Shown in pieces: positions 6,007 to 59,652 of a DNA stretch of 64,000 nt. A program made the translations under genes and the position numbers. Below the pieces are notes generated by a model. That model was not told where the DNA came from. It saw only the letters and a program-made list of their open reading frames with translations, and searched no databases. Every line of letters starts with the position of its first letter. Position 1 is the first letter of the stretch. Where the stretch lies: IMG/VR virus record IMGVR_UViG_3300027759_006101, positions 62,001 to 126,000 of that record; one strand, given 5' to 3'.

Positions 6007-6630
6007 TTACAATTCTATATCTTTTTCTTCGTCAAAAAACTCTCTATCATCCACACCATTGAATTGAACATCAACGTGGGCATCAGGGAATTTAAGTCTT
6101 ATTTTGCTTATTGCTGCTTCTGTGTCGTAATCTTCTAATGGTAAATTAGTGGTGAAAACAACATCGTGAGAAATTTCTTCAGCATCTTCTTCCTCACTAT
6201 ACATATTCTCTAACCCAGGAATTGAAAGTTGGTCTGTTAGCAATTTGCCTTCTTTGTCAGAACCTTTTGATAGTGCTTTGAAAGATAAAGGGTCCATAAA
6301 GAAGAATTTCCAAACACCATTTTCAGGAAATAATAAAATTTGAGGATAAAGCTCAAAATGCCTTCTTGTTCCTTTGGATCTTTCAACAAGTTGTTCCATA
6401 GGATCTTTTGTTGGATCAACAGTAAACTTTTCATCACCAAGAATATCTATTGGATCTCTTCTTTCTTTTCTTGATTTAGTAAGTACAAAATCTGATAATG
6501 TTTCGGGATTTTTATATACTGTATCAAAGTCCAAATCAGATGGATCTATGGCAAGTTTAGTCAACTTATCTGCCAATTTGTGTCTTCCAATACTGTCTAA
6601 AAAAGAAGCAACTCTTAATAGTATTTGCAT
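6007..6630 (-). CDS. Hypothetical protein with N-terminal helical-hairpin tag
   Basis: 207-aa ORF beginning MQILLRVASFLDSIGRHKLADKLT. Confidence 0.6.
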   Translation of the reverse strand: MQILLRVASFLDSIGRHKLADKLTKLAIDPSDLDFDTVYKNPETLSDFVLTKSRKERRDPIDILGDEKFTVDPTKDPMEQLVERSKGTRRHFELYPQILLFPENGVWKFFFMDPLSFKALSKGSDKEGKLLTDQLSIPGLENMYSEEEDAEEISHDVVFTTNLPLEDYDTEAAISKIRLKFPDAHVDVQFNGVDDREFFDEEKDIEL

Positions 6631-6633
6631 AAT

Positions 6634-7344
6634 CTATTTTTTAGGTAGCTTGTGAGATACATCCTGTTTTTCGTCTTCTTTAAATTGAGTATAGACTTCA
6701 GAAGCTTTTTTTCTAATTCTTGTAAGTGCGTTGTCTACACATTTAGCTGGAACTTGTAGCGTTTGAGAAATTTCTTTGTATGATGAGTTTTGGCCATACT
6801 CAACAAAAATTTCCGCTTCTAATGATGTTAATTTATTTAAAAGCATTGTTGAATTGATTTCAAGTTCTTCTCTTACAATTATATCTTCAACTAGATTGAC
6901 TTCAGGAGATTCATCGAAGGGGTTTTTCTTATCAGGTATGTAATCTCCAAGTGAATGAAAATTGCCATCATCATTTAATATAAATGGAGCATCTAAAGAA
7001 ACTGAATCATTCAACGCTGAATTTTTCATTCTTTTTGCCGATGCTATGGCTGTTGCTAAATGTCTCTTGCAAACAAGATTGACACAAAAGTTTTTAAATG
7101 TAGTGTCTTTGGTGCAATCATAGGAATTTACAGCTTTAAATACACCTAATCTCAATTCTTGCATCACATCTTCTTTATCTCCGCCAACAATAAAAAAGTG
7201 AGGTGCAATTTTCTTGAGATCTGGTTCTACCATCTTGAGCAGTCTTTTAAATGCTGCTTGATTTCCCGCTTTTGCTCTATTTACTAATCTGACTATTCTA
7301 AAATCTTCGGTTGCCATCAAAACTCCCGAAGGCACTTTCTTCAC
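6634..7344 (-). CDS. sigH: SigH (Spo0H)-like RNA polymerase sigma factor
   Basis: FFIVGGDKEDVMQE, TTFKNF, RHLATAIASAKRMKNSALNDSVSLDAP, SYKEIS...KCVDNALTRIRKK. These track B. subtilis SigH (YFLIGADREDIVQE...SYQEIS...KSIDNALQRVKRK). Confidence 0.85.
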   Translation of the reverse strand: MKKVPSGVLMATEDFRIVRLVNRAKAGNQAAFKRLLKMVEPDLKKIAPHFFIVGGDKEDVMQELRLGVFKAVNSYDCTKDTTFKNFCVNLVCKRHLATAIASAKRMKNSALNDSVSLDAPFILNDDGNFHSLGDYIPDKKNPFDESPEVNLVEDIIVREELEINSTMLLNKLTSLEAEIFVEYGQNSSYKEISQTLQVPAKCVDNALTRIRKKASEVYTQFKEDEKQDVSHKLPKK

Positions 7345-7353
7345 TACATCTTT

Positions 7354-8415
7354 TTACGCATTTTCTTTTTCAGCGTATCTTTCAATTGTTTTGAGAACAC
7401 CTGTTGTTGCTACAATGTCCTCAGAAACCGTTTGCCTTATGTCTTTTGTAATGTTATACAGTTGTTCTGCAATATCAATAAGCAACAAAGTATTTACAGA
7501 TCTTGCTATATTTTCTATATCAACATCTCTTTCAACCTTTTTGGTCTTAATAACAACATACCTAAATGCTTCAATGAAATTTTGAGATGTTTCAAGCAGC
7601 AAATTACTTAGGCTTCTACCTTCAGAGTGAGATGCTTGGATAATACGGAAGGCATTAGCATAATTTTTTTGAATTATAGCGTAAGACAAATCAATAGAAA
7701 GTTGTTTGGGTGATCTGTCAAGTAACTCTCTAATATTATCTTCTGATATATCATTCATAGAAGCTTGTTCAAGAATAGAAAGAGCAGTTCTGGCACTTCC
7801 TTCGGCATCAGAAGCAATAAGATTCAATGCTTCATCATCATAAACAAGATTTTCTTTCTCGCAAACTTCACCTAATAATTCAACTAAATTTTGTTTATTC
7901 AATTTTTTCATCAAGAATGTTTGACAACGAGTATGAATAGCACGGAGAATTTTATGTGGGTCAGTTGTGCAAAAGAAAAACTTTACATAACTTGGCGGTT
8001 CTTCAGTAAGCTTGATAAGAGATGTTTGAGCTTGAGTGGTGAGCATCTGAGCTTCATCAAGAATAAAAATCTTATACTTACCTAAAGTTGGAGCAAGACG
8101 TGACAATTGAACAACATTTTCACGTATATGATCAACACCATTGTTTACTGCACAATTAATTTCATAAACATCTGGATGCTCATCGTTCAATACCATTTCT
8201 TTCAAATCAGCTTGTTCACTATTACAAAGAAGATGAGCTGAAGCAACACGAGCAAGAGTTGTCTTACCAGTACCAGGAGGGCCTGCAAAAATATAGGCGT
8301 GAGTAGTCCTATTATTCTTGATCTGTGTCTCAAGAATTTCTGCTGATTTGCTGCCCTTTATGTCTTTAAATGTTTTAGGGCGGTATTTATTGTAATAGCT
8401 TTGACTAATCATCAT
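7354..8415 (-). CDS. dnaX: DNA polymerase III gamma/tau clamp-loader ATPase (short form)
   Basis: YNKYRPKTF, GPPGTGKTT, DVYEIN, ILDEAQML, TRCQ, EGSARTALSILEQ. Confidence 0.92.
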   Translation of the reverse strand: MMISQSYYNKYRPKTFKDIKGSKSAEILETQIKNNRTTHAYIFAGPPGTGKTTLARVASAHLLCNSEQADLKEMVLNDEHPDVYEINCAVNNGVDHIRENVVQLSRLAPTLGKYKIFILDEAQMLTTQAQTSLIKLTEEPPSYVKFFFCTTDPHKILRAIHTRCQTFLMKKLNKQNLVELLGEVCEKENLVYDDEALNLIASDAEGSARTALSILEQASMNDISEDNIRELLDRSPKQLSIDLSYAIIQKNYANAFRIIQASHSEGRSLSNLLLETSQNFIEAFRYVVIKTKKVERDVDIENIARSVNTLLLIDIAEQLYNITKDIRQTVSEDIVATTGVLKTIERYAEKENA

Positions 8416-8887
8416 CTTCCATCGGTAAAATTAAAGGTAAAGCGTGAGAGCCTTCTAACAAAGAAGGCAATCCATCTTTCAGCATCCAATAAGGACCAAT
8501 TCCAGCTCTTACAAAATATTCTGTAATAAACCCATAGTCCTGAACATCGAACGAACGAATTTTACCATCTTGTGAAGGACTGATGGAGTATAAACAACGA
8601 AAAATGATCCATTCTTTTTTAGATTGTTCTAATTCTTCCCATAGATCAGACCACACACCAAGACAATAAATTTTGCCGTTACCAAGAGATTGCAAAATTC
8701 CCCTAGCCCAAGATTGAGTTAGCCCCGACATAATATATGGCGGGGCATTCTTTCCTTTATATCCATCCATTTCTACAAAGTGAACTAAATCTAAATTTAC
8801 ATATCCAATGAATGGATAGTATTTAGAAACTAGTTTTTCTGCAATATCTTTGCATTCTTCGGACTCTATAAATTCTGGTTCACTCAT
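8405..8887 (-). CDS. Phage metallopeptidase-like protein, probably inactive
   Basis: Fits the W..L...K..I.(HEL.H)...DV..F layout, but the HExxH position reads FRCLYS. Confidence 0.4.
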   Translation of the reverse strand: MSEPEFIESEECKDIAEKLVSKYYPFIGYVNLDLVHFVEMDGYKGKNAPPYIMSGLTQSWARGILQSLGNGKIYCLGVWSDLWEELEQSKKEWIIFRCLYSISPSQDGKIRSFDVQDYGFITEYFVRAGIGPYWMLKDGLPSLLEGSHALPLILPMEDDD

Positions 8888-9219
8888 AGCGATAACTGAG
8901 TAACTGCTACAACTTGATTGTTCTCATCACGAATTGCTGATGGTCCTGTATCAACACAGAATACATCTTCACGATCAAATGAAACAAAGTCCATTGTCAC
9001 TCTATTTACAATATAGTAAACTCCATCTTCAGGATCAGGTAGATTTACAATTTTTTCAAAGTGAGTTTCAACAATAGGAATCCCAGTCAAATAAGCAACA
9101 ACTCTTTGCTTTGTCTCTACGTGGCAAGGATTTTCACATCTTGGTAAAGTTGCGTGTCCTGAAATTGTAATATCATGCCCAATAAGATTTACAAACTTCT
9201 TAAATTCTGGATACATCAT
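8884..9219 (-). CDS. Conserved phage hypothetical protein
   Basis: FVNLIGHDITI...LPDPEDGVYYIV...IRDENNQV pattern, recognised from phage proteins. Confidence 0.55.
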   Translation of the reverse strand: MMYPEFKKFVNLIGHDITISGHATLPRCENPCHVETKQRVVAYLTGIPIVETHFEKIVNLPDPEDGVYYIVNRVTMDFVSFDREDVFCVDTGPSAIRDENNQVVAVTQLSL

Positions 9220-9593
9220 AAATCTAAACCTGCTATGCCTTCGTTACGTTTTGGCTGATAAACAAATGCTGATTGGTCTCCATTGGGTCTCAAATCATTA
9301 ATGAGAACTCTAGAACCACCACCAATTCCCATCACCAATTGATCATAAACAATACCAGCATAAGAAAGTTGCTTGACTGTAACATCACGCAAGCTCTCTT
9401 TGCGTCCGGTAGTAAGAATGATCTTGTAGCCTTTACTATCCCATTCACGAACTTTATCTACAGATCCGTAAATAATTTTAGGTTGATATCCGGGCTTTGC
9501 AATTTCAGTTGGGTCACCTTGTTCCCAAAGTGTTCCATCTAAATCACAAAAAATAGTGTAATTCTTTGTGGCTTGATCAATATTATGTTCCAT
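9216..9593 (-). CDS. HAD-superfamily phosphatase (capless)
   Basis: IFCDLDGT motif I, ILTTGR motif II, INDLR motif IV. Confidence 0.8.
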   Translation of the reverse strand: MEHNIDQATKNYTIFCDLDGTLWEQGDPTEIAKPGYQPKIIYGSVDKVREWDSKGYKIILTTGRKESLRDVTVKQLSYAGIVYDQLVMGIGGGSRVLINDLRPNGDQSAFVYQPKRNEGIAGLDL

Positions 9594-10123
9594 TACTTAC
9601 CTGTACTACCTAATCCACCCTTACGAGATGTCTTGTCAGTTTCACCAAATTCTTCTACTTCAACCAATTCGTGAACTGCCAGTTTAGCGACAACCATTTG
9701 GGCAATTCTGTCACCATGCTTGATTGAAAATGGAATCTTATTGTGATTAATAAGAATCACCTTGAGTTCAAAATCTTCCCCATCACCACAATAGTCACTG
9801 TCAATAGTACCTGGAGTATTAAGGACAGTAACACAAAACTTAGCAGCCAAACCAGAACGAGGGCGTATTTGAATTTCATAGCCGTTAGGAATATTTACGT
9901 TCAAACCAGTTGGAACAATCAAAGTTGAATGCGGAGCAATAAGAGTTTGCTCTTCGTATGAGTCCTTAACCCAAGCGCAAAGATCGTAACCAGCAGCACT
10001 TTCTGTTGCTTTTTTTGGAATTACTGCTCCTTCACGAAAAGCCTTAATCTCAACTGTTGCTTTAGGTCCAGTTATATTGCTGGCTCCTTTTCCTGTAACT
10101 TGTCCACTAGCTGATGTAGCCAT
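9593..10123 (-). CDS. dut: Trimeric dUTPase
   Basis: AAGYDL, RPRSGLA, GTIDSDYCG, GDRIAQ, RKGGLGSTG. Confidence 0.95.
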   Translation of the reverse strand: MATSASGQVTGKGASNITGPKATVEIKAFREGAVIPKKATESAAGYDLCAWVKDSYEEQTLIAPHSTLIVPTGLNVNIPNGYEIQIRPRSGLAAKFCVTVLNTPGTIDSDYCGDGEDFELKVILINHNKIPFSIKHGDRIAQMVVAKLAVHELVEVEEFGETDKTSRKGGLGSTGK

Positions 10124-10124
10124 T

Positions 10125-10442: not shown

Positions 10443-10445
10443 AAA

Positions 10446-10482
10446 AGGATTATATATTGTAAATAGTAAAATGTAAATAGTA
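10446..10482 (+). promoter_or_regulatory. Candidate phage late-type promoter: AGGA-N10-TAAATA plus tandem TGTAAATAGTA
   Basis: AGGA at 10446-49, TAAATA at 10460-65. TGTAAATAGTA occurs at 10458-68 and 10472-82, and also at 24-34 upstream of the first ORF. Confidence 0.4.
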
Positions 10483-10823: not shown

Positions 10824-10845
10824 TTCACAATAAAGAGAAAAATAA

Positions 10846-12636: not shown

Positions 12637-15492
12637 TTAAGTCTTTTTTCTTATCATATAGGTTAGTTTATCTGCTAACCTATATTCTTTTTTAAAATCT
12701 AGTTTTTGAGCAATTTTTAGCATAGATTTAACAGAAGCTAATACATCTTCATCATCTTCATCATCTTCATCATCATATTCATCTTCATCTTCTTCATCAT
12801 CTTCATCATCTTCATCATCTTCATCATCTTCAATGAGGTTTTGTTGATTTTGTGCTTGTGGTTGATATGGCCTGTTATATTGTTCTTGTCTATCTAATTG
12901 AAATTGTCTATATTCTTCCAATTTTTCTCTTGAAATATTTTGGAATAATTCTGGGTTTTGTTGTTTAAATTGAGGTGTAGTATTCATCAAAGGAATATAT
13001 TCTTTGAATAAATGTGGTTTTTGATTTGCAAAAATAGAAATCATACCAGGAGACAAATACTGTCGTGATGATTGTAAGATTTTGATAAAAGTTTGGTCCG
13101 AAAGTTTATTCAAAACCTCTGGATACCAAGAGATTAATGTTTCAAATTTACTCAAATCCCAAAAACTACTACTTAATTTTTCCAAAAGCTCAAATAATAA
13201 ATTTTCATCATTGTTATTACTAATTAAATTAACAATAAAAGTATTTGGCTTAAGAATTACAATACTTCTCCAAGCTTGACCAGAGTCTAAATATTCTCTT
13301 ATATTCTTAAAATATTTTTCATATTCATTAACATTTGTACGATCTAGCACAAAAGTCATCACGTCTTTACGTGCGTGTGACTTTACAATATTTACAAATT
13401 CATCAGAAGAAGATACTTCTTTTGGAAGATAATCAAAAAACATTGATAATCGTTGATATTGTTTGTCAGAATCTTCATCAACTTCATCTTCATCGTAGTT
13501 ATCATCATCTTCGTCACCTATAGGATGTAAAAGATGAATTTTTTTGAAAACACTACCAACTAATTTATCAAAATATTCGATTGATGTTTTCCAGAATTCA
13601 ATATTATTCTTATCATTAGCATTGACATCTGCATAATCATCCATCAAATAAATAATTCTTGTCAAATTATCCAAAATATTTCCAGGTTGAGATGGTGGAA
13701 GATTTTGATAATCTTTATAATCAAGATAATTTGCTTTATCTACTGCTTTGTAAACTATAAATTCAGGATCGTCCTTAAATTTATCAGGAACAATTTTCCA
13801 TAAATCCGACCATTTAGAAAGCTCATTAACATTAAAGAGCATGTCTATATTATATTTTTCATTTCTTGCTCTTTCTAATAATGGTGCTATTGCTTCTGGA
13901 ATTTGCAATAACAATCTTGTATTTTCTAAAGTTGGGTATTTTTTGTATACGCTTTCTATTCCTTTGATAATAGCTAACTTGTTTACAAATTCATCATTGA
14001 AATCTATTTCGGCATTATTATCAGTGTTTTTGAGTCCAATTTGAGGGAGAGCTATAGACCAGTTTTGAGGAAAATTTCTGAATTGCCCCCCTTTTGAAGA
14101 TCTATCTAAAATCTTTTGCTTTACTTCTTCATTATTAGTGTCAATATATTCGAGGAATGCAAAATTAGTATTTGCACCTTGTTCAACACCAGCAAGTTGT
14201 TGTTTTAAATAAGAATTTAGCAATTGTCTGTTTTTGCTAATTCTATCAGTTTGATTTTTTGGAAGAGTCAAACCAGTATTTACATATTGAACAAGAATAT
14301 TGTTTCCACCAGGAGTATCGAAAAGATAATTGAAAATTCTGTCAGGCAAAATCCAACCTGTTCCAATAAATTTAGACAAATATGTTTTTGCATCATCTGT
14401 CTCAACTATAATTTTTGAATACACTTCCTTAGAAGGATCATTGCCAAAAGGAATTTTAGAGACTATACGTTCTTCAGGTAAAATTAATGGATGATAACCA
14501 CGGACTTCATTTACAAAAGGAATAAATTTTCCTCTTTCTTGTAAAAAATATGCGTTATTTTCTTCAGGTGAAAATTTAATTTCAAATTTTCCCTTATCCC
14601 ACATTCTCAAATCTTCTTCAGTAAAGGGACTTTCACGTTTACCGTAAGCATAAGATTTTACATAATGAGATAATTCAGATATCAATCGCTCCTCTGGAGA
14701 TATGGGTTTGTTTTTTAAGATCTTTTCTTCTTTGCCAGTTTCAGGATTAATTGTTCGAGCGTCAATATTTACGCCTTTGCTCTTCAAATATTTAAGATAT
14801 GTTGGAATGTCTCTTCCGGTAATTGTTCGACCTTTGTACTCAAAAGAAATATCTTCAGTTAATTGTGGACCTGTTCTGTTAACTGTATCAGTGATTTTAA
14901 TATCTTTTGAATTATATTGCAATGCTACTTTTCTTACGTTAGATGTAGGAGGATTTTCATCCCAAACAATAAAAAATGTAGCAGCTTGATTACTTCTATA
15001 ACTTTGCCACATATTATTGGGGCCTTTGTAAGCTATACACCAAGAAGTATCAGCAGCTAAATCTTTGCTGTCCTGTGCTTTTTCTACCTTAAATATTTGT
15101 ATACCATCACCAGTCAAGACAGGAGTATGTTCCGAAATATCTGCTTCAGGTTGTACTTCTTGCTTTTTGACTATTGGGAATTTGCCGTGAACAAAATCTA
15201 TTAGCTCTTCTAAATCATTTAATTGATTATCATTTATAACAACAAAACTTTTAGATACTTTGATATTGGCTGGATTTAATTTTTTAATATTAATATATTC
15301 AGTAAGATGGCTAACAATATCATTAATAGCAAATTCATCAGAATCTCTTGCTAACATCCAAGCAGCAATAGGTTTAAAGACAGAACTATAATTATTTACA
15401 ATTTCTTTATAGCTGTTATAATCTTTTCCAACAGACTTGAAAATTGAAATAAATAATTCTTTATTTGCTATTACTATACGATTATTAAACAT
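12637..15492 (-). CDS. Large orphan protein, paralog of 15485-18511, with C-terminal acidic tract and helical-hairpin tag
   Basis: Shared block T[SR]WCI[AG]YKGPNNMWQSYR...FF.V.D.NPPT.N.RKVAL and NPETG.E.ILKNKP. Ends KIAQKLDFKKEYRLADKLT. Confidence 0.7.
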   Translation of the reverse strand: MFNNRIVIANKELFISIFKSVGKDYNSYKEIVNNYSSVFKPIAAWMLARDSDEFAINDIVSHLTEYINIKKLNPANIKVSKSFVVINDNQLNDLEELIDFVHGKFPIVKKQEVQPEADISEHTPVLTGDGIQIFKVEKAQDSKDLAADTSWCIAYKGPNNMWQSYRSNQAATFFIVWDENPPTSNVRKVALQYNSKDIKITDTVNRTGPQLTEDISFEYKGRTITGRDIPTYLKYLKSKGVNIDARTINPETGKEEKILKNKPISPEERLISELSHYVKSYAYGKRESPFTEEDLRMWDKGKFEIKFSPEENNAYFLQERGKFIPFVNEVRGYHPLILPEERIVSKIPFGNDPSKEVYSKIIVETDDAKTYLSKFIGTGWILPDRIFNYLFDTPGGNNILVQYVNTGLTLPKNQTDRISKNRQLLNSYLKQQLAGVEQGANTNFAFLEYIDTNNEEVKQKILDRSSKGGQFRNFPQNWSIALPQIGLKNTDNNAEIDFNDEFVNKLAIIKGIESVYKKYPTLENTRLLLQIPEAIAPLLERARNEKYNIDMLFNVNELSKWSDLWKIVPDKFKDDPEFIVYKAVDKANYLDYKDYQNLPPSQPGNILDNLTRIIYLMDDYADVNANDKNNIEFWKTSIEYFDKLVGSVFKKIHLLHPIGDEDDDNYDEDEVDEDSDKQYQRLSMFFDYLPKEVSSSDEFVNIVKSHARKDVMTFVLDRTNVNEYEKYFKNIREYLDSGQAWRSIVILKPNTFIVNLISNNNDENLLFELLEKLSSSFWDLSKFETLISWYPEVLNKLSDQTFIKILQSSRQYLSPGMISIFANQKPHLFKEYIPLMNTTPQFKQQNPELFQNISREKLEEYRQFQLDRQEQYNRPYQPQAQNQQNLIEDDEDDEDDEDDEEDEDEYDDEDDEDDEDVLASVKSMLKIAQKLDFKKEYRLADKLTYMIRKKT
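12746..12832 (-). repeat. Low-complexity GAT/GAA repeat encoding a poly-D/E tract
   Basis: TCATCTTCA-type iterations on the + strand. Encodes EDDEDDEDDEDDEEDEDEYDDEDDEDDED. Confidence 0.85.
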
Positions 15493-18400
15493 TGTATTTT
15501 CTCAATATATTTGTAAACTTATCTGCTAACTTGTATTGATAATTAAAATCTAATTTCTGTGCTATTTTCACCATTGATTTTACAAAGGCAGTAATAGGTT
15601 CTTCTTCTTCATCTTCTTCAGTTTCTTCTGACGCAAATGGATCAGGTAATTCTTCTTGTGTCCCAGGCGGTGTAGGTCTTTTGCCTTTCATCACTTTGCC
15701 AGTTTCTTCATCAAAATATCCAGTGCCATATTTTGATTTTCTTTCATATGCAAGAATTCTTGGAGCAAGGTTAGGATACATATGAACTAAAGCTGCCCTT
15801 ATTTCTGGCAATATATCCACATAAACATCTCTCTCTAAAATTCTCGTTTCAAAATATTTAGGATAATTTCTTAATAAATGCAATTGATGATTTAAATTTG
15901 GACGATTTCTAAAATAACTAAATATTCCTAAATTATAAAAATTTGGATCTTCTTTTACTTCTGGATAATGATGTGTATATATATCCAAAAATTCTAACAT
16001 AATATCTGGTGTAAAGTTGTTAAATGAATCAATTTCTTCATCACTAAATTTTCTTTTTTCAAGTATTTTTGAGAGGAATTCAAATGCATAACTTCTACCA
16101 CGATATAATACTCTGTAAAATTCAGATCTTACATTTCTTTCACCATCTAGAAATTGATTTATGTAGTCTTCATATAGCCAAGGTGTTTTTTCAATGTCTA
16201 TATTAGACATAAAATTCTTAGCAGAAATGCTGTTCATTCTTCTCTGCAAAAATTCTTTAATTTCAGGATCTTCTAAAAATTCTTGTGGAATAAACTTTAA
16301 AATGTTTGCAAAATCATTTTCACCAAAATTAAGTTCACTACCTATCCAATCAGCAAAATGATCTATATTCTTAAAGAAATTTTTCCAAAAATTTATATCT
16401 TGTATTGCATTTTGAAATTCTTGGATTGCATCTCTGAAATTTTCTTTTGCTTCATCACTCATCTCTAATTCTTCAAACTTCTTAAATAATTTGCCATCAT
16501 TATAAATAGCCCATAATAAAGTTTGATTTGCATTATTAGGAACAATTTCTTCTGGTCTATCTTTGTATGCGTAGTGTGCGTCTTTTAAGATTGTTTGTTC
16601 GTGTTCTTTAAGATCAAATGCAAAATTTATGGTTGGATTATCACTCCAATCAGAATGGTAACTTTCAGTAAATTCGTCATAATTATTAAAAGAAAATTCA
16701 CGCAAAACATCTACATTTTTAATTTGAGAAATTAACGAAAGATCAAATGGATCGTTAGAATTGTAATATTTAACAATTTTTTCGGAAGGTTTTGGACATA
16801 ATATTGAATACTTTACTTCTTCCAATACCCCAAGTTCTTTTGCTTTTTCAAAATCTTCTGCATTGAAACCAGTTGCCATTGCCACTTCTTTGATAAGTGA
16901 TTTATCCCCTGATTGCAATACGACATTTTTCAAATCTTGTTTTGGAAAAGCCGAAGTAAAATCTACTAAATCTTTATCTGTCAATCTATTTTTTGCATAT
17001 AATAAATATAATTCAGGAAATTTAGGATCTTCGAAAATAAAATTTCGTATACCATTTGGAACAAAAGTTTTTACAGTGCTAATATATTTTATCAACAAAT
17101 CTCTGTCGTTTAAATCCAACAATAAATCGGCATCAGCAGTTTCGGCGTATGTTGAACCTGATTGCAAATAGTCTTTTTCAATCAAAGTTTCAAGATAAAT
17201 TCTCAATAAATCTGGTTTTTTTCTTAAGTCTTGTCTAGCAACTTCATTTATACCGCCCTGTTTTTCAATTAATTGTTTAAATAAATCTTTTCTATTTAAG
17301 TTTATTAAATCAATTTGCATAAGAGGGCTAAATCTTCTACCAGCTATAATTTGACTTCTTAAGTATGAAGTAAGTAAATTTTTGTTATTTCTAAAAAATT
17401 GATATTGCGTTTCAGAAAGTTGCAAACCAGTGTTGACATATTTCATCAACAAATCTTCACCACCAACACTTCTAGATAAATATTCTAAAACTTCATCTTT
17501 TACACGTTTGCCTAAACCCATCCATCTCGAAGTATAGAATTTAGCATCAGGGTTATTAAGGATGTACGCAATACCAGATCTATCTGAAATCTCTTCTATA
17601 ATATCTAAACTATTTTTATCTATTCTTTTTATGTCACTATCTTCGCCATTGACTTTAGATTTTCCAGATTGCCATAAAAGAATATCTTCCACACCCAAAG
17701 CAGCTATATAATTGAATGTGCCATTTTGTAATCTTTCTTCTGTAGTTTTGGGTTTGTTCTTGAGAATTAATTCTTCTTGACCAGTTTCGGGATTTTGTCT
17801 TGTTGCCTGTAAATTAATTCCCTTACCAGTCAAGTATTCAGAATATTTATCCCAATCCCATCCATTTGAAAGTTGATGTCCTGTCATATTTGGAATGTCT
17901 GTTAATAAAACATTACCTGAAGCAAAATCAAGAGCAACTTTTCGTTGATTTTCTGTAGGAGGATTATTATCAAAAACTACAAAAAAAGAAGCATCGTGCG
18001 AATCTCTATAAGATTGCCACATATTATTTGGGCCTTTATAGCCGATACACCATCTTGTATCATCACCAACTAATCTTCTACCATCGTTGGCATCATTTAT
18101 CTCAAATATCTTAATGGAATTATCTTTATTTGCTACAACAGGAACATCTTCAATTTCAGTATTTTCAGCCTGTTTTTCAGCTTGCAAAATAGGAAATTGA
18201 GCGTGGATATATTCTGTTAGTTTAATTGCATCATCAAAAACTTTATCGTTTATTTTGACAGCTTTTGCGCCAACTGAATATTTAGTAATTCTTCTTGAGT
18301 CAATATATTTTTGTATAGCTTCAATATATTCATTTGGTTCAATATTACGGGCCAATAACCAAGCAGCAAATACTTGATACTTTTGATCATATTGCTTTAC

Positions 18401-18511
18401 TGTTTCTCTTAAGTCTTGATAATATTCTGCATCTTTGCCCAAATGATTACAAATACCTTGAATATCTTCTTTTATGCCAGCTGTAACAATCCTGAGACTA
18501 TACCTTTTCAT
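15485..18511 (-). CDS. Large orphan protein, paralog of 12637-15492, with C-terminal helical-hairpin tag
   Basis: 1008 aa. N-terminal ~270 aa aligns by eye with its neighbour. Ends KIAQKLDFNYQYKLADKFT. Confidence 0.7.
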   Translation of the reverse strand: MKRYSLRIVTAGIKEDIQGICNHLGKDAEYYQDLRETVKQYDQKYQVFAAWLLARNIEPNEYIEAIQKYIDSRRITKYSVGAKAVKINDKVFDDAIKLTEYIHAQFPILQAEKQAENTEIEDVPVVANKDNSIKIFEINDANDGRRLVGDDTRWCIGYKGPNNMWQSYRDSHDASFFVVFDNNPPTENQRKVALDFASGNVLLTDIPNMTGHQLSNGWDWDKYSEYLTGKGINLQATRQNPETGQEELILKNKPKTTEERLQNGTFNYIAALGVEDILLWQSGKSKVNGEDSDIKRIDKNSLDIIEEISDRSGIAYILNNPDAKFYTSRWMGLGKRVKDEVLEYLSRSVGGEDLLMKYVNTGLQLSETQYQFFRNNKNLLTSYLRSQIIAGRRFSPLMQIDLINLNRKDLFKQLIEKQGGINEVARQDLRKKPDLLRIYLETLIEKDYLQSGSTYAETADADLLLDLNDRDLLIKYISTVKTFVPNGIRNFIFEDPKFPELYLLYAKNRLTDKDLVDFTSAFPKQDLKNVVLQSGDKSLIKEVAMATGFNAEDFEKAKELGVLEEVKYSILCPKPSEKIVKYYNSNDPFDLSLISQIKNVDVLREFSFNNYDEFTESYHSDWSDNPTINFAFDLKEHEQTILKDAHYAYKDRPEEIVPNNANQTLLWAIYNDGKLFKKFEELEMSDEAKENFRDAIQEFQNAIQDINFWKNFFKNIDHFADWIGSELNFGENDFANILKFIPQEFLEDPEIKEFLQRRMNSISAKNFMSNIDIEKTPWLYEDYINQFLDGERNVRSEFYRVLYRGRSYAFEFLSKILEKRKFSDEEIDSFNNFTPDIMLEFLDIYTHHYPEVKEDPNFYNLGIFSYFRNRPNLNHQLHLLRNYPKYFETRILERDVYVDILPEIRAALVHMYPNLAPRILAYERKSKYGTGYFDEETGKVMKGKRPTPPGTQEELPDPFASEETEEDEEEEPITAFVKSMVKIAQKLDFNYQYKLADKFTNILRKYNV

Positions 18512-27007: not shown

Positions 27008-27085
27008 CAAACAAATTGTATCATTAAAGGTAAGAATAATCATCTACAAAGAAATAAAGAATATCATTTTATTCAAGGTTTAAGA

Positions 27086-28456
27086 ATGGATAAATTTCAG
27101 AAACTTTCACAATTATCAAAAGAAATACAAATTTTAGAGACTGCAGGTAAAATTAAGGCAGCAGAAGTCCTTCATAAAAAATTCATCAAGGAATCACAAT
27201 ATATGATGCCACAAATGATGCCTATGATGATGATGCCTCAAATGATGCCTCAAATGATGCCTCAAATGATGCCTCAAATGATGATGGCAAGACCAACAGC
27301 TACTGTCGCTCCAGCTGCAGTAGCTAGACCAGTTGTCAATCAAACTCCAACTTCGGCACCTACACCAGTAGTTGCTCCAACTCCAGTACAGCAAGGGCAG
27401 ACAGGGCAAACTGGGCAAGTTACGCCTCCTGCTCAATCTACGACACCTCCTACTACACAGCCACCTGTAGTAAACCCACCTGTGACAACTCCTCCTCCTA
27501 TGCCTATTGATAAAGTTAAGAGACAATACGGTGATGGTCAATCAAAAAATGAAGAGTTGCAATATCTTGATAAAGAGAAAAGAAGACTAGAAGAATTAGG
27601 TTACAATGATCCCAAAAGCCCCTTTTATCAACAGTATCTGACTATTATTGGTATGATAAATAGAAATAAAGGCGGCTCAATAATCAAAAAGAGTGAAAAT
27701 ATGAACAAATTACAAAAGTTAGCACAATTAAATAAAGATATTGAATTATTAGAAAACGCTGGAAAGTTCAAAGCAGCTGAAATTTTACAAAAGAAATTAC
27801 TTAAAGAAGCACAAACTTTTGGTTATGGTGACACAAGTAGTAATTTTGATGCTCCTGGATATTCTGGACCAAGACAAGATATGCCTGACACATATGCAAA
27901 CGTAGAACTTAATGAACAAATAAGACAGAATTTAAGAAATAATAAACAACAAAATCCTTCAACTCAAACATCAAATCCTACTGAGTCTGATACAGCTAAT
28001 GTAAATGCTTTCAATGAAGGTATGTATGGTCAAATAAACCCTTTATCTTCAACTTCACAGCTTGATTACAAGACATTAATCAACCAAGCAAAAAATTACA
28101 TTGCGAGTGGTGATATGAATACAGCTGCTCAAATTAAGCAGCAAGCATTAAATTCTAGTATGACTCCTCAACAAAAAGCAGCGTTTCAACAGCAATACAA
28201 CACTATAGTTCAAAATTATTCCAATACAGCTAATAACCCTGAAGCATTTCAGTCGCAAGAAAATGCTCAGAATGCAATCGCTAAAGCTGCTCAATCACTG
28301 GGCATAAACACAAATGATCCACAAGCAATAAGAAAGAATGAATTAAAACTGAGAAGCAAATTACAGCAAATGGGATTACTAAAAGATAAAAATGTCCAAA
28401 GTTTACTAAGACAAATTTCTTTAAGAGGTTACTATATACAGAACCCTAATAAGTAA
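27086..28456 (+). CDS. Low-complexity orphan protein made of two tagged modules
   Basis: MDKFQKLSQLSKEIQILETAGKIKAAE (27086) is repeated as MNKLQKLAQLNKDIELLENAGKFKAAE (27701). M/P/Q/T-rich. Start moved to the ATG at 27086. Confidence 0.65.
   Translation: MDKFQKLSQLSKEIQILETAGKIKAAEVLHKKFIKESQYMMPQMMPMMMMPQMMPQMMPQMMPQMMMARPTATVAPAAVARPVVNQTPTSAPTPVVAPTPVQQGQTGQTGQVTPPAQSTTPPTTQPPVVNPPVTTPPPMPIDKVKRQYGDGQSKNEELQYLDKEKRRLEELGYNDPKSPFYQQYLTIIGMINRNKGGSIIKKSENMNKLQKLAQLNKDIELLENAGKFKAAEILQKKLLKEAQTFGYGDTSSNFDAPGYSGPRQDMPDTYANVELNEQIRQNLRNNKQQNPSTQTSNPTESDTANVNAFNEGMYGQINPLSSTSQLDYKTLINQAKNYIASGDMNTAAQIKQQALNSSMTPQQKAAFQQQYNTIVQNYSNTANNPEAFQSQENAQNAIAKAAQSLGINTNDPQAIRKNELKLRSKLQQMGLLKDKNVQSLLRQISLRGYYIQNPNK
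27203..27286 (+). repeat. 12-bp tandem repeat ATGATGCCTCAA encoding (MMPQ)n
   Basis: Four near-perfect consecutive units plus degenerate flanking units. Confidence 0.9.
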
Positions 28457-53127: not shown

Positions 53128-53132
53128 TTTAG

Positions 53133-53166: not shown

Positions 53167-53183
53167 GTTATAATTTATTTAGT

Positions 53184-54253: not shown

Positions 54254-54268
54254 ATTTATAATACCCTT

Positions 54269-54976: not shown

Positions 54977-54990
54977 TTCCTCCATTTTGT

Positions 54991-55920: not shown

Positions 55921-55932
55921 TCCAAAGCAAAA

Positions 55933-56487
55933 TTAAGCTCTTACTTCAATTGTACATTTTATATCAACTTCGTAATCTATGCAAACAAGAATCAATCTTT
56001 CTAAAATTTTTAAGTTGTTTATCATTACAAGATTAGTCGGATCAGGATTCGATATAGAAATTAACTCTAATGCGTTTTGTATTTTTTTACTCATCACAAA
56101 CGGATTATAAGATTTATTTTTCATCAAATCTAATATAAACATCATTGGTAAAATATATTCAGATGAGATTTCTACTTTGTTTTTGGTGCTTGATAAATCG
56201 CAAGCAAAAATTTGAAATGAATAAGAAACTAACTCACTATCTTTGATTATATATTCCTTGCAGTATTCATGATCAAAATTTAACTCATATTCAAAATTAT
56301 TATCTTTCAATATACTAAGCCATTGTTCTAAAGTTCTTCGATTGTTTAATTCAATTAAATCTCCTAAAAGAGTTATCATAATTGAATTGTAATTAGGAGG
56401 AGAACTAATTTGGCCTTTCCATAAAATAAATTTTGGATCTACTTGAGTGACAGTATAAGGTTCAAAAATAAGTGAGGTGTAACTCAT
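55933..56487 (-). CDS. Hypothetical protein
   Basis: 184-aa ORF. Confidence 0.5.
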   Translation of the reverse strand: MSYTSLIFEPYTVTQVDPKFILWKGQISSPPNYNSIMITLLGDLIELNNRRTLEQWLSILKDNNFEYELNFDHEYCKEYIIKDSELVSYSFQIFACDLSSTKNKVEISSEYILPMMFILDLMKNKSYNPFVMSKKIQNALELISISNPDPTNLVMINNLKILERLILVCIDYEVDIKCTIEVRA

Positions 56488-56502
56488 ATATTTATTTTAC
56501 AT

Positions 56503-56967
56503 TTAAGAAATTATTTTTTCATAAGTCTCAAAAAATTCTTGAGCTGCTATCCTGTAAACTTCTTGATATGAAGGAGACGGAGAAACTATATAATCCCCAG
56601 TTTTTAGGGTCATTAATCTGCCCCATTTAGCTACAAATTCTAATTCTGAGCCATAGTATCTACAAGCTATAATTTTGCCCTTAGGAATATATACTGCGCC
56701 ATTTTCATAAAAGTAGAAAAATTTGTATCTACTAAAAAGCATATCACAAGGAACAATATATTCTTCTTGACATTCAGTATGCAAATTCTTAACTACAAAA
56801 TCCCCTTCTTTTGCATAATTTGTAGTTTCCAGGCCATCAGCAGTCCAAGTCTCTATATATTGATTTAAAGTGGCAGGATAGGCATAAATTAAACAAGTCT
56901 TGTAATATTCTTGCCCATTATCTCTTATTTCAGGAAAAAAATAAGAGTATGCTTCCTGTTGTGTCAT
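56503..56967 (-). CDS. PGDYG-family-like protein (two repeats)
   Basis: AKEGDFVV...Y.V....F..RY and WG..M.LKTGDYIV...Y.I....F.ETY repeats. Confidence 0.6.
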   Translation of the reverse strand: MTQQEAYSYFFPEIRDNGQEYYKTCLIYAYPATLNQYIETWTADGLETTNYAKEGDFVVKNLHTECQEEYIVPCDMLFSRYKFFYFYENGAVYIPKGKIIACRYYGSELEFVAKWGRLMTLKTGDYIVSPSPSYQEVYRIAAQEFFETYEKIIS

Positions 56968-57056
56968 CAAAGATCGCTTATTTTTGATTCAAGAGAATAT
57001 AAACTTGTTTCAGCTTCATCTTTGGAAATTGCTAATTTTATTCTTGAGTACCACAT
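56967..57056 (-). CDS. 29-aa micro-ORF with MWY tag (not in the ORF track)
   Basis: Hand translation MWYSRIKLAISKDEAETSLYSLESKISDL*. The TGA overlaps the ATG of the downstream gene. Confidence 0.55.
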   Translation of the reverse strand: MWYSRIKLAISKDEAETSLYSLESKISDL

Positions 57057-57154
57057 AACTTTTATATACTAGTTTGTTTCTTAATAACCCTAACAGAAGG
57101 AAAAAGGATTTGTTATTTTATAATAAATACTATATCTCTGTTTAGGATTTGTGT

Positions 57155-58252
57155 ATGTACAATAATCGAAACTATAAATTTTCTCAAAAATCAGTTGATG
57201 AAGGATTAGCTAATTTAAAAGATTACTTTCAGGGCGCAGGTGCAAAAACTGTTGAATCAACTGAAGCGCTTGCAATTTTGAGCAAAAATGGATTTAATGA
57301 TTTCCCTTCATTTACCAAAGGTCTACAAAACGGAGAAGCTAATGCTATAACTGCTGCAAAAGAACTATCAGAAAAAGTCTATGGAATAGCAAGTTATTTA
57401 TTGCCGTTCTACGCTGGAGATAGAGCTGTATCAACCATATTAAATAAAACAAATCCAAGAATAAATCCAACTACCAAAGTAAAGCTTCCATTTGAGCCAC
57501 CAACAAAAGGTGGTCCAGGATTACTTAAGAATATTGGCCTTGGAATGGCCGGAACTTTAGGCGCAGAAGGCGTTATGAGTGTTGCTGAAAATCTTAAAGG
57601 GGATTTGGCAATTTATAAAGACTATTTAGGTGATTATAATAAGGATTTAAATGCAATTCTTGAACAATATCCAAAAAATGAAGACATCAGCATACTTGTA
57701 GATTTGTTGAAAACTAAAGGACAAAAAGGTCTAAAAATTATTGAAGATGCAAAAAATCAAGTTGTTTCTAATAGAAAACGATATAAAATTGCAATCAAAG
57801 GCGAAGCTAATATTGGATCATACTTACATCAATTCTTATCTGGTGCAGCTGGTGGTGCAGCTGCTACAAAAACCTGGCAAGGCGCTCTTATAAGTGGCTT
57901 AGGAGATATGGCTTACGATATTGGCAAAGACGTTTATCATAATTTGCAAGACACTGATTATAAAGCTACAGCATATGCAGCAGAAGTTGTTGAAAAAGTA
58001 GAAAGTATGGCAAACCAAGTAGAAAAATATGACAGAGAGTTTGCTAATGATTTGAGAAATACTGCAATGCAATTTGAAGCCTGGTTTAGAAAAAATATTT
58101 ATAAAGTTTCAGAAAATAAATTAAACCCAGATTCCTGGAGAAATTATTTAGAAAAAAATGTATTTAATAAAAAAGACGAGTTAGAAGAAGTAGCAGATAC
58201 TTATCAAATGGATGAATATTTGAGATTAAAAAAAATGAATAAGGATATATAG
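57155..58252 (+). CDS. Hypothetical protein with Gly/Ala-rich membrane-like helices
   Basis: AGGA RBS before the ATG at 57155 (MYNNRNYKFSQ). GLGMAGTLGAEG and SGAAGGAAAT...GALISGLG glycine-zipper-like segments. Confidence 0.55.
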   Translation: MYNNRNYKFSQKSVDEGLANLKDYFQGAGAKTVESTEALAILSKNGFNDFPSFTKGLQNGEANAITAAKELSEKVYGIASYLLPFYAGDRAVSTILNKTNPRINPTTKVKLPFEPPTKGGPGLLKNIGLGMAGTLGAEGVMSVAENLKGDLAIYKDYLGDYNKDLNAILEQYPKNEDISILVDLLKTKGQKGLKIIEDAKNQVVSNRKRYKIAIKGEANIGSYLHQFLSGAAGGAAATKTWQGALISGLGDMAYDIGKDVYHNLQDTDYKATAYAAEVVEKVESMANQVEKYDREFANDLRNTAMQFEAWFRKNIYKVSENKLNPDSWRNYLEKNVFNKKDELEEVADTYQMDEYLRLKKMNKDI

Positions 58253-58254
58253 AT

Positions 58255-59652
58255 ATGTCATTTACTGGATTAATAAAACAAGCACAACTAGCAGATAAAG
58301 TTGGAAATTATAAGTTAGCAGATATTTTGACTAACAGATTGATCAAAATCGCTAAAACTTCTCCTGTAAAAGTTTTTTTAGATGCACTGGACTTAAAAAA
58401 AGTAGTTGTTGATGCTGTAGGTGGTGCTAAAAAAACTATTGCACAAGTAGCTCAAAAATCAACATCAGACTTAATTTTATTATATTCAAAGCCTGCTGGC
58501 AAAGCTGAAGCCTTAAAAATCATAGATGAACTTGCCCTTCCAGTTAGAACTAAAGCTTCATTGATTAGAAAATTAGATTCAGGCGATGACAAAGCAATTG
58601 AACAGCTGAATAAAATTTTTACTGCTAAATATCAAGCGATGGCTGATGCTGGTTACAAAGTTGAAACCAAACTAGATCCTAAACTAGAACCTAAACCAGA
58701 AACCAAACTAGAGCCTAAGCCTGATGAATCAACTATTATAACAAGGTTAGACGAAATCACAAAGACTTTCAAGGGTAATAAAGAAGAATTAGTGGCAGAG
58801 CTCAAAAAGTTAGGGTTTACAGATGATGAAATAAAGGCAGCTGGAATTATTAAAGCTGATGGAGGACTAAACATTGTTAATGTCAACAAGCTTATCAACA
58901 ATGCATCTCCTGAAAGAGTTGTAGAATTAGAATTAAATGCTAGTACAATAAATATTGGCGGAAGAGCAACATCTTTAAGCGGTATGGTTTACGCTCAGTT
59001 AGCAGACTTACTAAGAAGAACTGATTTAAATCCTGCGGACCAAACGAAGATTATTAATAAAATTAAAATTCAATTGAGAAAAGATCCTAATTTGGTTGTT
59101 GACGAAGATTTAAGAAGATATTTCTCAGTTGAATTCCATTCACCGAGACCTCCAAAGCCTGACGCTCCAAAACCTGACGCTTCAAAACCTGACGCTCCAA
59201 CTACTCCAGGTTCTACTGCTGATGAGATAGCTGAAGGTGCATCCAATACTGGTAAAAAACCAAAAGACTGGAAAGCTTGGGCAATGCTTTTAGGAATTCC
59301 GGCACTATTAGCATTAGGATGGACCGTGTATAATGGTAAAATCGTCAATAAAGATACAGGTAAACCTATATCTGATGAGGAAGGAAACGGAGCTATGAAT
59401 AGGGCGGGTGCGGGAACAGGAGCAGGGACTGGAAAGTTCGACTCTAAAATGTACGATGATCGTATGAAAACAACTCCCAATCAACAAATGATGAAAGGTA
59501 ATAAACCTCAAGAGTTTGTTAATGCAAATAAAGACAAATACAAAACACAAAGAGAATTTTATAATGCAGCTCTAGCAGCTGGAGATGAAAACTTCGCAAA
59601 TAGTGTTATTGCTCTTGTTAAAAAAGATATGTCTTTGGACATTGAAAAGTAA
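58255..59652 (+). CDS. Hypothetical membrane protein with N-terminal helical-hairpin tag
   Basis: LIKQAQLADKVGNYKLADILT, PKPE and KPDA repeats, transmembrane segment WAMLLGIPALLALGW. Confidence 0.6.
   Translation: MSFTGLIKQAQLADKVGNYKLADILTNRLIKIAKTSPVKVFLDALDLKKVVVDAVGGAKKTIAQVAQKSTSDLILLYSKPAGKAEALKIIDELALPVRTKASLIRKLDSGDDKAIEQLNKIFTAKYQAMADAGYKVETKLDPKLEPKPETKLEPKPDESTIITRLDEITKTFKGNKEELVAELKKLGFTDDEIKAAGIIKADGGLNIVNVNKLINNASPERVVELELNASTINIGGRATSLSGMVYAQLADLLRRTDLNPADQTKIINKIKIQLRKDPNLVVDEDLRRYFSVEFHSPRPPKPDAPKPDASKPDAPTTPGSTADEIAEGASNTGKKPKDWKAWAMLLGIPALLALGWTVYNGKIVNKDTGKPISDEEGNGAMNRAGAGTGAGTGKFDSKMYDDRMKTTPNQQMMKGNKPQEFVNANKDKYKTQREFYNAALAAGDENFANSVIALVKKDMSLDIEK

What the first reader, a model, noticed from the sequence alone, without database searches (positions are those of the whole stretch)
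6547..58356. Shared ~25-aa helical-hairpin tag (K.A..LD..G.YKLAD.LT) on six modules of otherwise unrelated proteins
Seen, hand-aligned: 6630(-) N-terminal LLRVASFLDSIGRHKLADKLT; 15492(-) C-terminal MLKIAQKLDFKKEYRLADKLT; 18511(-) C-terminal MVKIAQKLDFNYQYKLADKFT; 58255(+) N-terminal LIKQAQLADKVGNYKLADILT. Looser copies are at 27086 (LSKEIQILETAGKIKAAEVLH) and 27701 (LNKDIELLENAGKFKAAEILQ). It sits only at termini of orphan modules, never on replication enzymes, and at C-termini it follows an acidic linker. Known analogy: the T4 capsid-targeting sequence directs internal proteins into the prohead. Inference: a portable docking tag that loads a diverse cargo set (PcfJ-like giants, membrane and low-complexity proteins) into the head or onto a shared scaffold. 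I do not recognise this as a named family. It is the strongest candidate for an undescribed system here.
Basis: partly seen in the sequence, partly recalled or inferred. Interest (0 to 1): 0.85.

Follow-up and report, generated by a model that had tools for sequence, protein, structure and literature searches.

The report
Shared terminal helical-hairpin tag in jumbo phage
An uncultured 358-kb freshwater phage and its relatives attach the same ~33-residue helix-turn-helix "tag" to the very start or very end of dozens of otherwise unrelated, mostly unannotated proteins, which looks like a shared docking address whose partner is still unknown.

Summary
These are A (6007-6630, N-terminal), the paralogous ~1000-aa proteins B and C (C-terminal) and E (58255-59652, N-terminal). 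The two "looser" copies in 27083-28456 score about 0 with every family profile.

- 95 distinct copies in about 40 protein families with no detectable similarity outside the tag.
- 101 of 105 copies lie at an extreme terminus.
- Tandem arrays of up to six tagged genes occur, one of them elsewhere in this same genome.
- It is absent from Pfam, PDB sequences, GenBank phages and 185,579 cellular genomes.

The tag is a helix-turn-helix hairpin with consensus hh.L.[KR]IA..LD..G.[YF]K.A[DN].hT.hh. Both helices have wide hydrophobic faces. It has the length and signature spacing of one TPR unit, but TPR membership fails by sequence.

Only one cargo family has a known domain, a glucosaminidase. Most of the rest are acidic orphan proteins joined to the tag by acidic linkers.

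Best reading: a portable docking hairpin for a common phage-encoded partner, most likely a virion assembly. The capsid-loading idea is plausible by analogy but untested. A second tag, N-terminal MWY[RK]xA, turned up on many other proteins of this clade.

The parts
6532..6630 (-). Hairpin tag, N-terminus of protein A (MQILLRVASFLDSIGRHKLADKLTKLAIDPSDL)
   Evidence: 38-59 bits. Conserved in the A orthologues fetched. AF2 predicts H2-13, turn, H17-27 at low confidence.
6007..6630 (-). Carrier A, 207 aa, orphan. Its start lies 3 nt after the stop of a sigma-factor gene.
   Evidence: No Pfam or PHROG hit. Sigma factor and PurA-like gene flank A in all 17 loci, clamp loader also where the locus reaches it.
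12640..12738 (-). Hairpin tag, C-terminus of giant B (ASVKSMLKIAQKLDFKKEYRLADKLTYMIRKKT)
   Evidence: 42-49 bits.
12745..12831 (-). 29-residue D/E linker directly before the B tag
   Evidence: Translation. Clade-wide 47% D/E before C-terminal tags.
12637..15492 (-). Carrier B, 951 aa, orphan, paralogue of C
   Evidence: blastp B against C 1.8e-68. No Pfam or PHROG hit.
15488..15586 (-). Hairpin tag, C-terminus of giant C (FVKSMVKIAQKLDFNYQYKLADKFTNILRKYNV)
   Evidence: 53-59 bits. It is the conserved island of the B/C alignment: 19/40 identities against about 6/40 in neighbouring blocks.
15599..15631 (-). Acidic linker SEETEEDEEEE before the C tag
   Evidence: Translation.
15485..18511 (-). 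Carrier C, 1008 aa, orphan. A giant of this family lies next to a PcfJ-like gene in every giant-bearing locus examined.
58255..58362 (+). Hairpin tag, N-terminus of protein E (MSFTGLIKQAQLADKVGNYKLADILTNRLIKIAKTS)
   Evidence: 36-51 bits. 88-100% conserved in seven orthologue clusters.
58255..59652 (+). Carrier E, 465 aa, orphan
   Evidence: No Pfam or PHROG hit. No match in GenBank phages.
27095..27199 (+). Looser copy 1 in the low-complexity protein 27083-28456. Membership in the family is not supported.
   Evidence: Not recovered by any family HMM.
27710..27814 (+). Looser copy 2, internal, an internal repeat of copy 1. Membership in the family is not supported.
   Evidence: Family HMM score -0.9 to 0.5. 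It matches copy 1 strongly.

Best explanation
The motif is a lineage-specific, portable helix-turn-helix hairpin of about 33 residues. It has the length and signature spacing of one TPR unit. It serves as a terminal docking tag.

How it is built: the tag sits at the extreme N- or C-terminus. An acidic or low-complexity linker joins it to a cargo that differs from family to family. Each helix has a wide hydrophobic face, with three positions per heptad. An isolated two-helix hairpin cannot bury these faces.

How it probably works: I infer that the hairpin completes a helical bundle with one common partner encoded by the phage. This tethers dozens of different orphan proteins to the same assembly. 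The assembly I consider most likely is the virion, either the prohead interior as co-injected proteins or the capsid surface. This parallels the shared targeting sequence of T-even internal proteins and the coat-binding helix-turn-helix of the P22 scaffolding protein.

Shown: the module exists, is terminal, is under protein-level selection, is carried by families with no other detectable similarity, and is unknown to the domain libraries.
Inferred: that it docks to a partner.
Further inferred and untested: that the partner is a virion component.

My probability for 'docking tag for a common partner' is about 0.7. For 'the partner is the virion' it is about 0.35. The confidence given is for the full statement.
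For: - Position profile: 95 distinct copies give the profile. A10, L13 and D14 are 97-100% conserved. G17 (60%), Y/F19 (88%), A/S22 (99%), D/N23 (87%) and T26 (85%) are also kept. Hydrophobic positions are 2, 3, 6, 9, 10, 13 and 18, 19, 22, 25, 28, 29, 32.
- Terminal position: 79 of 105 copies lie within 30 residues after an in-frame stop and 22 within 8 residues of the stop codon. Only 28% would be terminal if placement were uniform.
- Unrelated carriers: 45 blastp clusters once the tag is masked, about 40 after discounting mis-split fragments of the giants.
- Cargo: of 36 family representatives only one has a Pfam or PHROG domain, a glucosaminidase / endolysin-like domain.
- Arrays: tandem runs of five or six tagged genes occur, including L159 from the window's own contig.
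- Selection: the tag is the conserved island of B against C, and synonymous codons differ.
- Specificity: no full copy in 185,579 cellular genomes. All 97 matches to the core YKLADK[LF]T lack helix 1.
- Structure: AF2 predicts helix-turn-helix in A. It predicts four helices in the 71-aa two-tag protein P0071, whose Foldseek hits are almost all TPR proteins.
- Charge: cargo is acidic (median pI 5.0) and linkers are D/E-rich. C-terminal tags carry about +5.
- Neighbours: conflict-type genes lie nearby (PcfJ-like, ART-PolyVal, Tad2-like). This fits the injected-effector theme of PMC5512222.
Against: - No virion, scaffold, portal or capsid gene was found near any carrier. None was seen to carry the tag.
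- The window is a replication and nucleotide-metabolism region. A lies in a conserved clamp-loader / sigma / A / PurA-like block, which suggests a non-virion role for at least that carrier.
- No shared protease site follows the N-terminal tags.
- Acidic cargo is not typical of DNA-associated internal proteins.
- Structure models are low to medium confidence (pLDDT 52.6 and 69.6). Foldseek E-values are 0.13 or worse.
- No partner has been identified.
Confidence: 0.35

Rival explanations
1. Self-association module. The hairpins pair or stack with one another, as four-helix bundles or TPR-like stacks. Carriers would then form homo- or hetero-oligomers or a network, and no separate receptor is needed.
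For: Some proteins carry two copies, one at each end. These are P0071 (71 aa, nothing but two hairpins), L158 4022-4963 and L169 6420-7355. AF2 folds P0071 into four helices and its nearest structures are tandem TPRs. The wide hydrophobic faces fit this reading.
Against: Polar positions (K/R8, N/Q11, D/N23, T26, K/R31) are conserved across about 40 families. That fits one common partner better than many private dimers. Indiscriminate cross-association of dozens of proteins would need a purpose. The models are low confidence.
Confidence: 0.2
2. Recruitment tag for an intracellular hub of replication or transcription. Candidates are the phage sliding clamp, a sigma factor / RNA polymerase, or a AAA+ machine. 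T4 clamp-binding terminal tails are the precedent.
For: All window carriers lie among replication genes. A is translationally adjacent to a sigma factor and close to clamp-loader and clamp genes in all 17 loci. The window encodes a classic-clade AAA+ ATPase. One copy gives a weak MIT-like hit.
Against: Cargoes include a peptidoglycan hydrolase, zinc-ribbon mini-proteins and P/T-rich low-complexity proteins. These have no obvious place at a replisome. The tag does not resemble the bacterial clamp-binding motif QL[SD]LF (from general knowledge; not tested here). No replication enzyme in the window carries the tag.
Confidence: 0.12
3. Membrane-targeting amphipathic element, like the terminal helices of MinD or FtsA.
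For: Extreme terminal position at either end, a flexible linker, and strongly basic C-terminal copies.
Against: Membrane-targeting helices keep amphipathicity, not sequence. Here specific residues are kept in 85-100% of copies (A10, L13, D14, Y/F19, T26), including an acidic turn. N-terminal copies carry no net charge.
Confidence: 0.05
4. Leader-peptide-like recognition sequence, as in RiPP precursors: a conserved leader with variable Cys-rich cores in tandem arrays.
For: Arrays of small genes have a conserved N-terminal 35-40 residues and variable CxxC-rich C-terminal parts.
Against: Carriers range up to 1008 aa. Twenty-two copies are C-terminal. No radical-SAM, LanM-like or peptidase gene was seen next to the arrays.
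Confidence: 0.03
5. Chance resemblance or mere paralogy, with no shared function.
For: Pairwise BLAST between the A, B/C and E tags is only E 0.002-0.16. B and C are paralogues.
Against: 64 database hits at E<=1e-3 are almost all terminal. There are 95 distinct copies in about 40 families. Chance matches to the core in cellular genomes never carry helix 1.
Confidence: 0.01

Closest known systems
T4 capsid targeting sequence (CTS) of internal proteins IPI-III and Alt
   Same: A short shared terminal sequence sits on otherwise unrelated, fast-evolving small proteins that are encoded in variable tandem loci. It addresses them to one assembly. (T4 facts are from general knowledge and PMC3012670 / PMC5512222.)
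   Different: The CTS is about 10 residues, N-terminal only and cleaved off by the prohead protease. Here the tag is a hairpin of about 33 residues at either end, with no shared cleavage site and no sequence similarity. Virion location is unknown.
Coat-binding C-terminal helix-turn-helix of the P22 scaffolding protein gp8
   Same: A basic helix-turn-helix at the extreme C-terminus with a G-D turn. It docks by electrostatics to the coat protein and can carry foreign cargo into procapsids (general knowledge).
   Different: No detectable sequence relationship: hhalign does not align the gp8 C-terminus. gp8 is a single protein, not a tag shared by dozens of families.
Tetratricopeptide repeat (TPR) / MIT helical hairpins
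   Same: A unit of 33-36 residues, helix-turn-helix, with signature spacing A-x3-D-x2-G-x-Y-x2-A. Foldseek hits of the two-tag protein are nearly all TPR proteins. One copy gives a weak MIT hit.
   Different: No TPR Pfam model matches any of 34 copies. The copies are solitary and terminal instead of tandem arrays of three or more. The profile does not align with a TPR protein from a clade contig (IMGVR_UViG_3300027193_000501).
Encapsulation peptides of bacterial microcompartments and cargo-loading peptides of encapsulins
   Same: Short terminal elements at either end, joined by a poorly conserved linker, that load varied cargo into a protein shell (general knowledge).
   Different: Those are single helices or extended peptides of 10-20 residues recognised by shell proteins. 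No shell or encapsulin gene was seen here and there is no sequence similarity.

Membership tests
T4-type capsid targeting sequence | N-terminal position only | tested here: not met
   22 of 105 copies are C-terminal, including B and C in the window.
T4-type capsid targeting sequence | Followed by a prohead-protease site (L/I-x-E) and removed on maturation | tested here: inconclusive
   By eye, sequences after the N-terminal tags are acidic but share no fixed site. Cleavage itself cannot be tested with these tools.
T4-type capsid targeting sequence | Carriers are present in virions | not testable with these tools
   No cultured relative exists. There are no matches in GenBank phages.
TPR repeat (Pfam clan CL0020) | Match to a TPR profile | tested here: not met
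   0 of 34 copies hit any TPR model at E<=10. hhalign against a TPR protein from a clade contig gives probability 0.2%.
TPR repeat (Pfam clan CL0020) | 34-residue helix-turn-helix unit | tested here: met
   The profile spans 33-36 positions. AF2 gives H2-13/H17-27 in A and H2-14/H18-34/H39-51/H55-69 in P0071.
TPR repeat (Pfam clan CL0020) | Tandem arrays of three or more units forming a superhelix | tested here: not met
   One copy per protein in nearly all carriers, two at most.
TPR repeat (Pfam clan CL0020) | Fold similarity to solved TPRs | tested here: inconclusive
   The top 50 Foldseek hits are nearly all TPR proteins, but E is 0.13-0.7 and TM about 0.5, from a model with pLDDT 69.6.
MIT domain (PF04212) | Profile match above the gathering score | tested here: not met
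   One of 34 copies matches, at E 0.0058. The full-length P0041 scores 16.2 bits against a cut-off of 30.
UVR domain (PF02151) | Profile match | tested here: not met
   No hit for any copy, nor for protein 27083-28456.
P22-type scaffolding coat-binding domain | Sequence homology to the gp8 C-terminal helix-turn-helix | tested here: not met
   hhalign of the profile against gp8 aligns only 8 columns elsewhere in the protein, probability 0.2%.
PcfJ-like (PF14284), for giants B and C | Profile match to the PcfJ domain | tested here: not met
   No Pfam hit at E<=0.01. hhalign against the neighbouring true PcfJ family gives E 0.024, probability 2%.

The most novel reading that the evidence does not exclude
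This clade of uncultured jumbo phages runs a protein-addressing system with at least two distinct terminal tags: the hairpin and the N-terminal MWY[RK]xA motif. Together they would sort dozens of orphan proteins per genome into particular assemblies. One example would be a large, fast-evolving arsenal of co-injected anti-defence proteins loaded into the capsid by a hairpin receptor. That would be a new cargo-loading mechanism for tailed phages, and a ready-made tag for packaging foreign proteins.
Probability: 0.25. Interest if true: 0.85.

Novelty: new variant of a known kind. Interest (0 to 1): 0.62.

Why it matters
If the hairpin is an address tag, one short profile labels a functional class among the dark-matter genes of a whole group of huge phages. 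At least 11 genes in this genome and about 40 families in the clade would be covered. It would also point to an unknown receptor. It would give a testable handle on how jumbo phages recruit large, rapidly changing sets of accessory proteins. It could also serve as a natural fusion tag for loading proteins into a phage assembly. If the hairpin is only an oligomerisation unit, its solitary terminal use across dozens of families in one genome is still unusual for a TPR-like element.

Tried and rejected
- Sequence libraries. Pfam and PHROGs on the carriers gave nothing. Pfam on 34 isolated tag copies at E<=10 gave no consistent family. PDB sequences searched with the tag profile and with P0071 gave nothing significant. 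A TYW1 C-terminal match at E about 0.5 is chance level.
- P22 scaffolding protein. I recalled a resemblance to its C-terminal helix-turn-helix, fetched gp8 and tested it. hhalign does not align it, so it stays an analogy only.
- GenBank phages. No match for a 24-kb window slice, B, E or an array protein.
- ESM Atlas. Only unnamed viral clusters came back.
- Word-indexed search on the E tag. Only E orthologues were found.
I used a narrower alignment and DNA patterns instead.
- AF2 of A gave pLDDT 52.6, too poor for a fold search.
- Shared promoter. Reading about 90 nt upstream of carriers and non-carriers showed nothing obvious.
- RiPP-leader, membrane-helix, DksA-like and T7SS YxxxD ideas were considered and set aside, the first two for the reasons given under rivals. 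I judged the YxxxD match and the zinc-ribbon cargo too generic to pursue; neither was tested.
- I could not reach the structural module of the 358-kb contig, so I could not check whether capsid, portal or scaffold proteins carry the tag.


Full report
**Source and setting.** The window is bases 62,001-126,000 of IMG/VR contig IMGVR_UViG_3300027759_006101. This is a 358,269-bp uncultured phage contig with about 32% G+C. The window encodes:
- replication proteins: DNA polymerase III alpha, a beta-clamp, a clamp loader, a DnaB-like helicase and a DnaG primase;
- recombination proteins: RecA, RecJ and RusA;
- nucleotide-metabolism enzymes: both ribonucleotide reductase subunits, dUTPase and a PurA-like enzyme;
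- two sigma factors, a AAA+ ATPase, a PcfJ-like protein and many orphan genes.

No structural gene was recognised. Nothing close exists among 50,697 GenBank phage records.

**The observation.** The four strong copies are in the sequence as quoted.
- Protein A (6007-6630, minus strand) and protein E (58255-59652, plus strand) carry the motif at residues 1-33 and 1-36.
- The two ~1000-aa proteins B (12637-15492) and C (15485-18511) carry it as their last 33 residues, after D/E-rich linkers.
The motifs lie at 12640-12738 and 15488-15586.

A regex and a profile HMM over all six frames find no further copy in 64 kb. The next best score is 7 bits against 43-54.

B and C are paralogues (1.8e-68). A, B/C and E share nothing else. 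Models built without the target still rank the left-out copies first: B+C finds A and E, and A+E finds C and B, at E 0.01-0.1.

The two looser copies lie in the low-complexity protein 27083-28456. They are an internal repeat of that protein and have the same helix-G-helix spacing. No family profile recovers them, whether built from 4, 32 or 105 copies, and the second is internal. I count four confirmed copies in three independent families.

**Evidence from outside the window.**
- A has orthologues in 17 viral loci (16 of them on other contigs). The tag is conserved in all of them. The order clamp loader / sigma factor / A / PurA-like gene is kept: sigma and the PurA-like gene flank A in all 17 loci, and the clamp loader is present wherever the locus reaches it.
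- A nine-sequence tag profile was searched against 1.84 billion representative proteins. It gave 64 hits at E<=1e-3. Three are repeat-protein artefacts. In nearly all the others the tag starts within about 7 residues of residue 1 or ends within 2 residues of the last residue; the exceptions (P0057, P0061) are listed.
- DNA-pattern and profile scans of IMG/VR brought in more loci. Look-ups of carrier proteins brought in further contigs.
- Among these loci there are 105 distinct tag instances, with 95 distinct tag sequences.
- Start-codon choice does not affect the next result. 79 instances lie within 30 residues after an in-frame stop and 22 within 8 residues of the stop codon. Four do neither, and two of those are at 35 and 38 residues. 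About 28% would be terminal if placement were uniform.
- With the tag masked, blastp at 1e-4 gives 45 clusters. A few are mis-split fragments of the giants, so about 40 families have no similarity detectable by BLAST.
- Tagged genes form tandem arrays of five or six (L159, L171, L173).
- L159 is another part of the window's own contig. It holds six tagged genes in a row plus a truncated P0041-type carrier. This genome therefore has at least 11 carriers.
- The core YKLADK[LF]T occurs 97 times in one genome each of 185,579 bacterial and archaeal species. None of those sites has helix 1 (best 16.7 bits), so the full tag is absent there.

**Anatomy.** The consensus is hh.L.[KR]IA..LD..G.[YF]K.A[DN].hT.hh.[KR]hA.
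- A10, L13 and D14 are 97-100% conserved.
- Y/F19, A/S22, D/N23 and T26 are each kept in 85-99% of copies. G17 is kept in 60%.
- Hydrophobic positions follow an a/d/e-type pattern in both helices. The faces are wider than a lone two-helix hairpin can bury.
- AlphaFold2 predicts helix 2-13, a turn, then helix 17-27 in A, but overall confidence is low (pLDDT 52.6).
- P0071 is a 71-residue protein made only of an N-type and a C-type tag. It is predicted as four helices (pLDDT 69.6).
- Its Foldseek hits in the PDB are almost all TPR proteins, but none is significant (E 0.13-0.7, TM about 0.5).
- The spacing A-x3-D-x2-G-x-Y-x2-A is that of TPR and MIT hairpins. This comparison rests on my knowledge of those consensus sequences.
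- No TPR, MIT or UVR model matches the copies consistently. The profile does not align with a TPR protein from a clade contig, IMGVR_UViG_3300027193_000501.
- Selection is on the protein. Residues identical between the window copies often use different codons. The tag is the conserved island of the B/C alignment.

**Cargo and context.**
- Of 36 family representatives only one has a recognised domain. It is a glucosaminidase that matches endolysin PHROGs.
- 51 further carriers of 204-404 aa from the 5.8-billion-protein set have no Pfam domain or informative name.
- Array members include CxxC...CxxC zinc-ribbon mini-proteins and P/S/T-rich low-complexity proteins.
- Cargo is mostly acidic, with median pI 5.0. 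C-terminal tags are basic (about +5) and follow linkers that are 47% D/E. N-terminal tags have no net charge.
- Neighbours include PcfJ-like genes, an ART-PolyVal ADP-ribosyltransferase domain, J-domain proteins, PhoH, AAA+ ATPases, sugar-nucleotide enzymes and prepilin-like DUF1559 proteins. No head or tail genes appear.

**Interpretation.** Three things are shown. The element is a conserved, portable, terminal protein module. It is restricted to one lineage of uncultured jumbo phages. The domain libraries searched do not know it.

That it is a docking element is inferred from four features: the terminal position at either end, the flexible linkers, the unburied hydrophobic faces, and the conservation of polar surface positions across many cargo families with no other detectable similarity. 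I put that inference at about 0.7.

Which assembly it docks to is not shown. I rank a virion assembly first, at about 0.35, for these reasons:
- The closest precedent for 'tandem, fast-evolving small genes that share only a terminal address' is the T-even internal-protein locus.
- A lysin, ~1000-aa proteins and conflict-type neighbours fit the injected-effector theme described in PMC5512222.
- The P22 scaffolding protein shows that a terminal basic helix-turn-helix can be a coat-binding device.

Against it:
- Every carrier context I could see is non-structural.
- A is embedded in a conserved block of clamp-loader, sigma-factor and PurA-like genes.
- There is no common protease site.

The rivals are hairpin-hairpin self-association (0.2), recruitment to an intracellular hub (0.12), membrane targeting (0.05), a leader-peptide role (0.03) and chance (0.01).

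**Comparison with known families.** Membership in the T4 CTS, TPR, MIT, UVR and P22 scaffolding families was tested and fails on at least one defining feature each (see the membership table). The resemblance is functional or architectural only. The label 'PcfJ-like giants' is not supported. B and C merely sit next to a true PcfJ gene.

**Verdict.** It is new as a sequence family. In kind it is a new variant of terminal docking or targeting tags. Its mechanism remains an inference. The decisive work is a whole-genome scan for carriers and a receptor, multimer modelling, and particle proteomics.

Noticed in passing
window 10482(+), 10846(+), 18599(+), 57056(-); many loci, e.g. L159 5484-6509(-), L044 16130-17935(-): A second terminal tag. 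Many otherwise unrelated ORFs of this clade begin M-W-Y-[RKS]-x-A-[QK]. All four ATGTGGTAY sites in the window are ORF starts 0-4 codons after an in-frame stop. In clade loci there are 66 distinct sites, 54 of them within 15 codons of an upstream stop. By eye they fall into roughly 25 protein families, including PcfJ-like, NUDIX-like, J-domain and 904-914-aa proteins.
   Followed up: partly
window 56967-57056(-) and 56503-56970(-): The MWY ORF at 57056 is only 29 codons long. It ends in a TGA that overlaps the ATG of the next ORF in another frame (TGATG). This could be a coupled mini-ORF, a frameshifted gene or an assembly indel.
   Followed up: no
window 4973-5968(-): A short (331 aa) adenylosuccinate-synthetase-like gene, 84-97% conserved in all related loci. 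Its phage matches include the Vibrio and Arthrobacter phage groups I know (general knowledge; the hit rows carried no PurZ annotation) to carry PurZ (2-aminoadenine genomes), and a 735-kb uncultured phage. PurA versus PurZ was not resolved.
   Followed up: partly
window 2302-2868(-) and 6634-7344(-): Two phage-encoded sigma-70-family factors lie within 5 kb. One is ECF-like.
   Followed up: no
L033 4509-5408(+), L169 3818-4783(-), L171 3083-4048(-): Prepilin-type N-terminal methylation motif plus DUF1559 proteins are encoded next to the tag arrays in at least 8 loci, beside a Laminin_G_3 protein. DUF1559 is typical of Planctomycetota and relatives, which is a possible host clue.
   Followed up: no
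one of the 36 window ORFs in alignment A9 (not mapped to a coordinate): A Tad2-like (Thoeris anti-defence 2) domain and a PhageMetallopep domain are present in the window. An ART-PolyVal ADP-ribosyltransferase domain is present in one neighbour of the tag arrays in related loci.
   Followed up: no
L048 2225-3394(-), L044 13234-14193(-), L039 101-691(+): More divergent N-terminal hairpins, e.g. MMKQVLSQLHNIINELQDNNLVKEAKVLDQVF and IAARIYDDIGDFQTADNLDQLIKLA. They fall below the HMM threshold, so the family is probably larger than counted.
   Followed up: no
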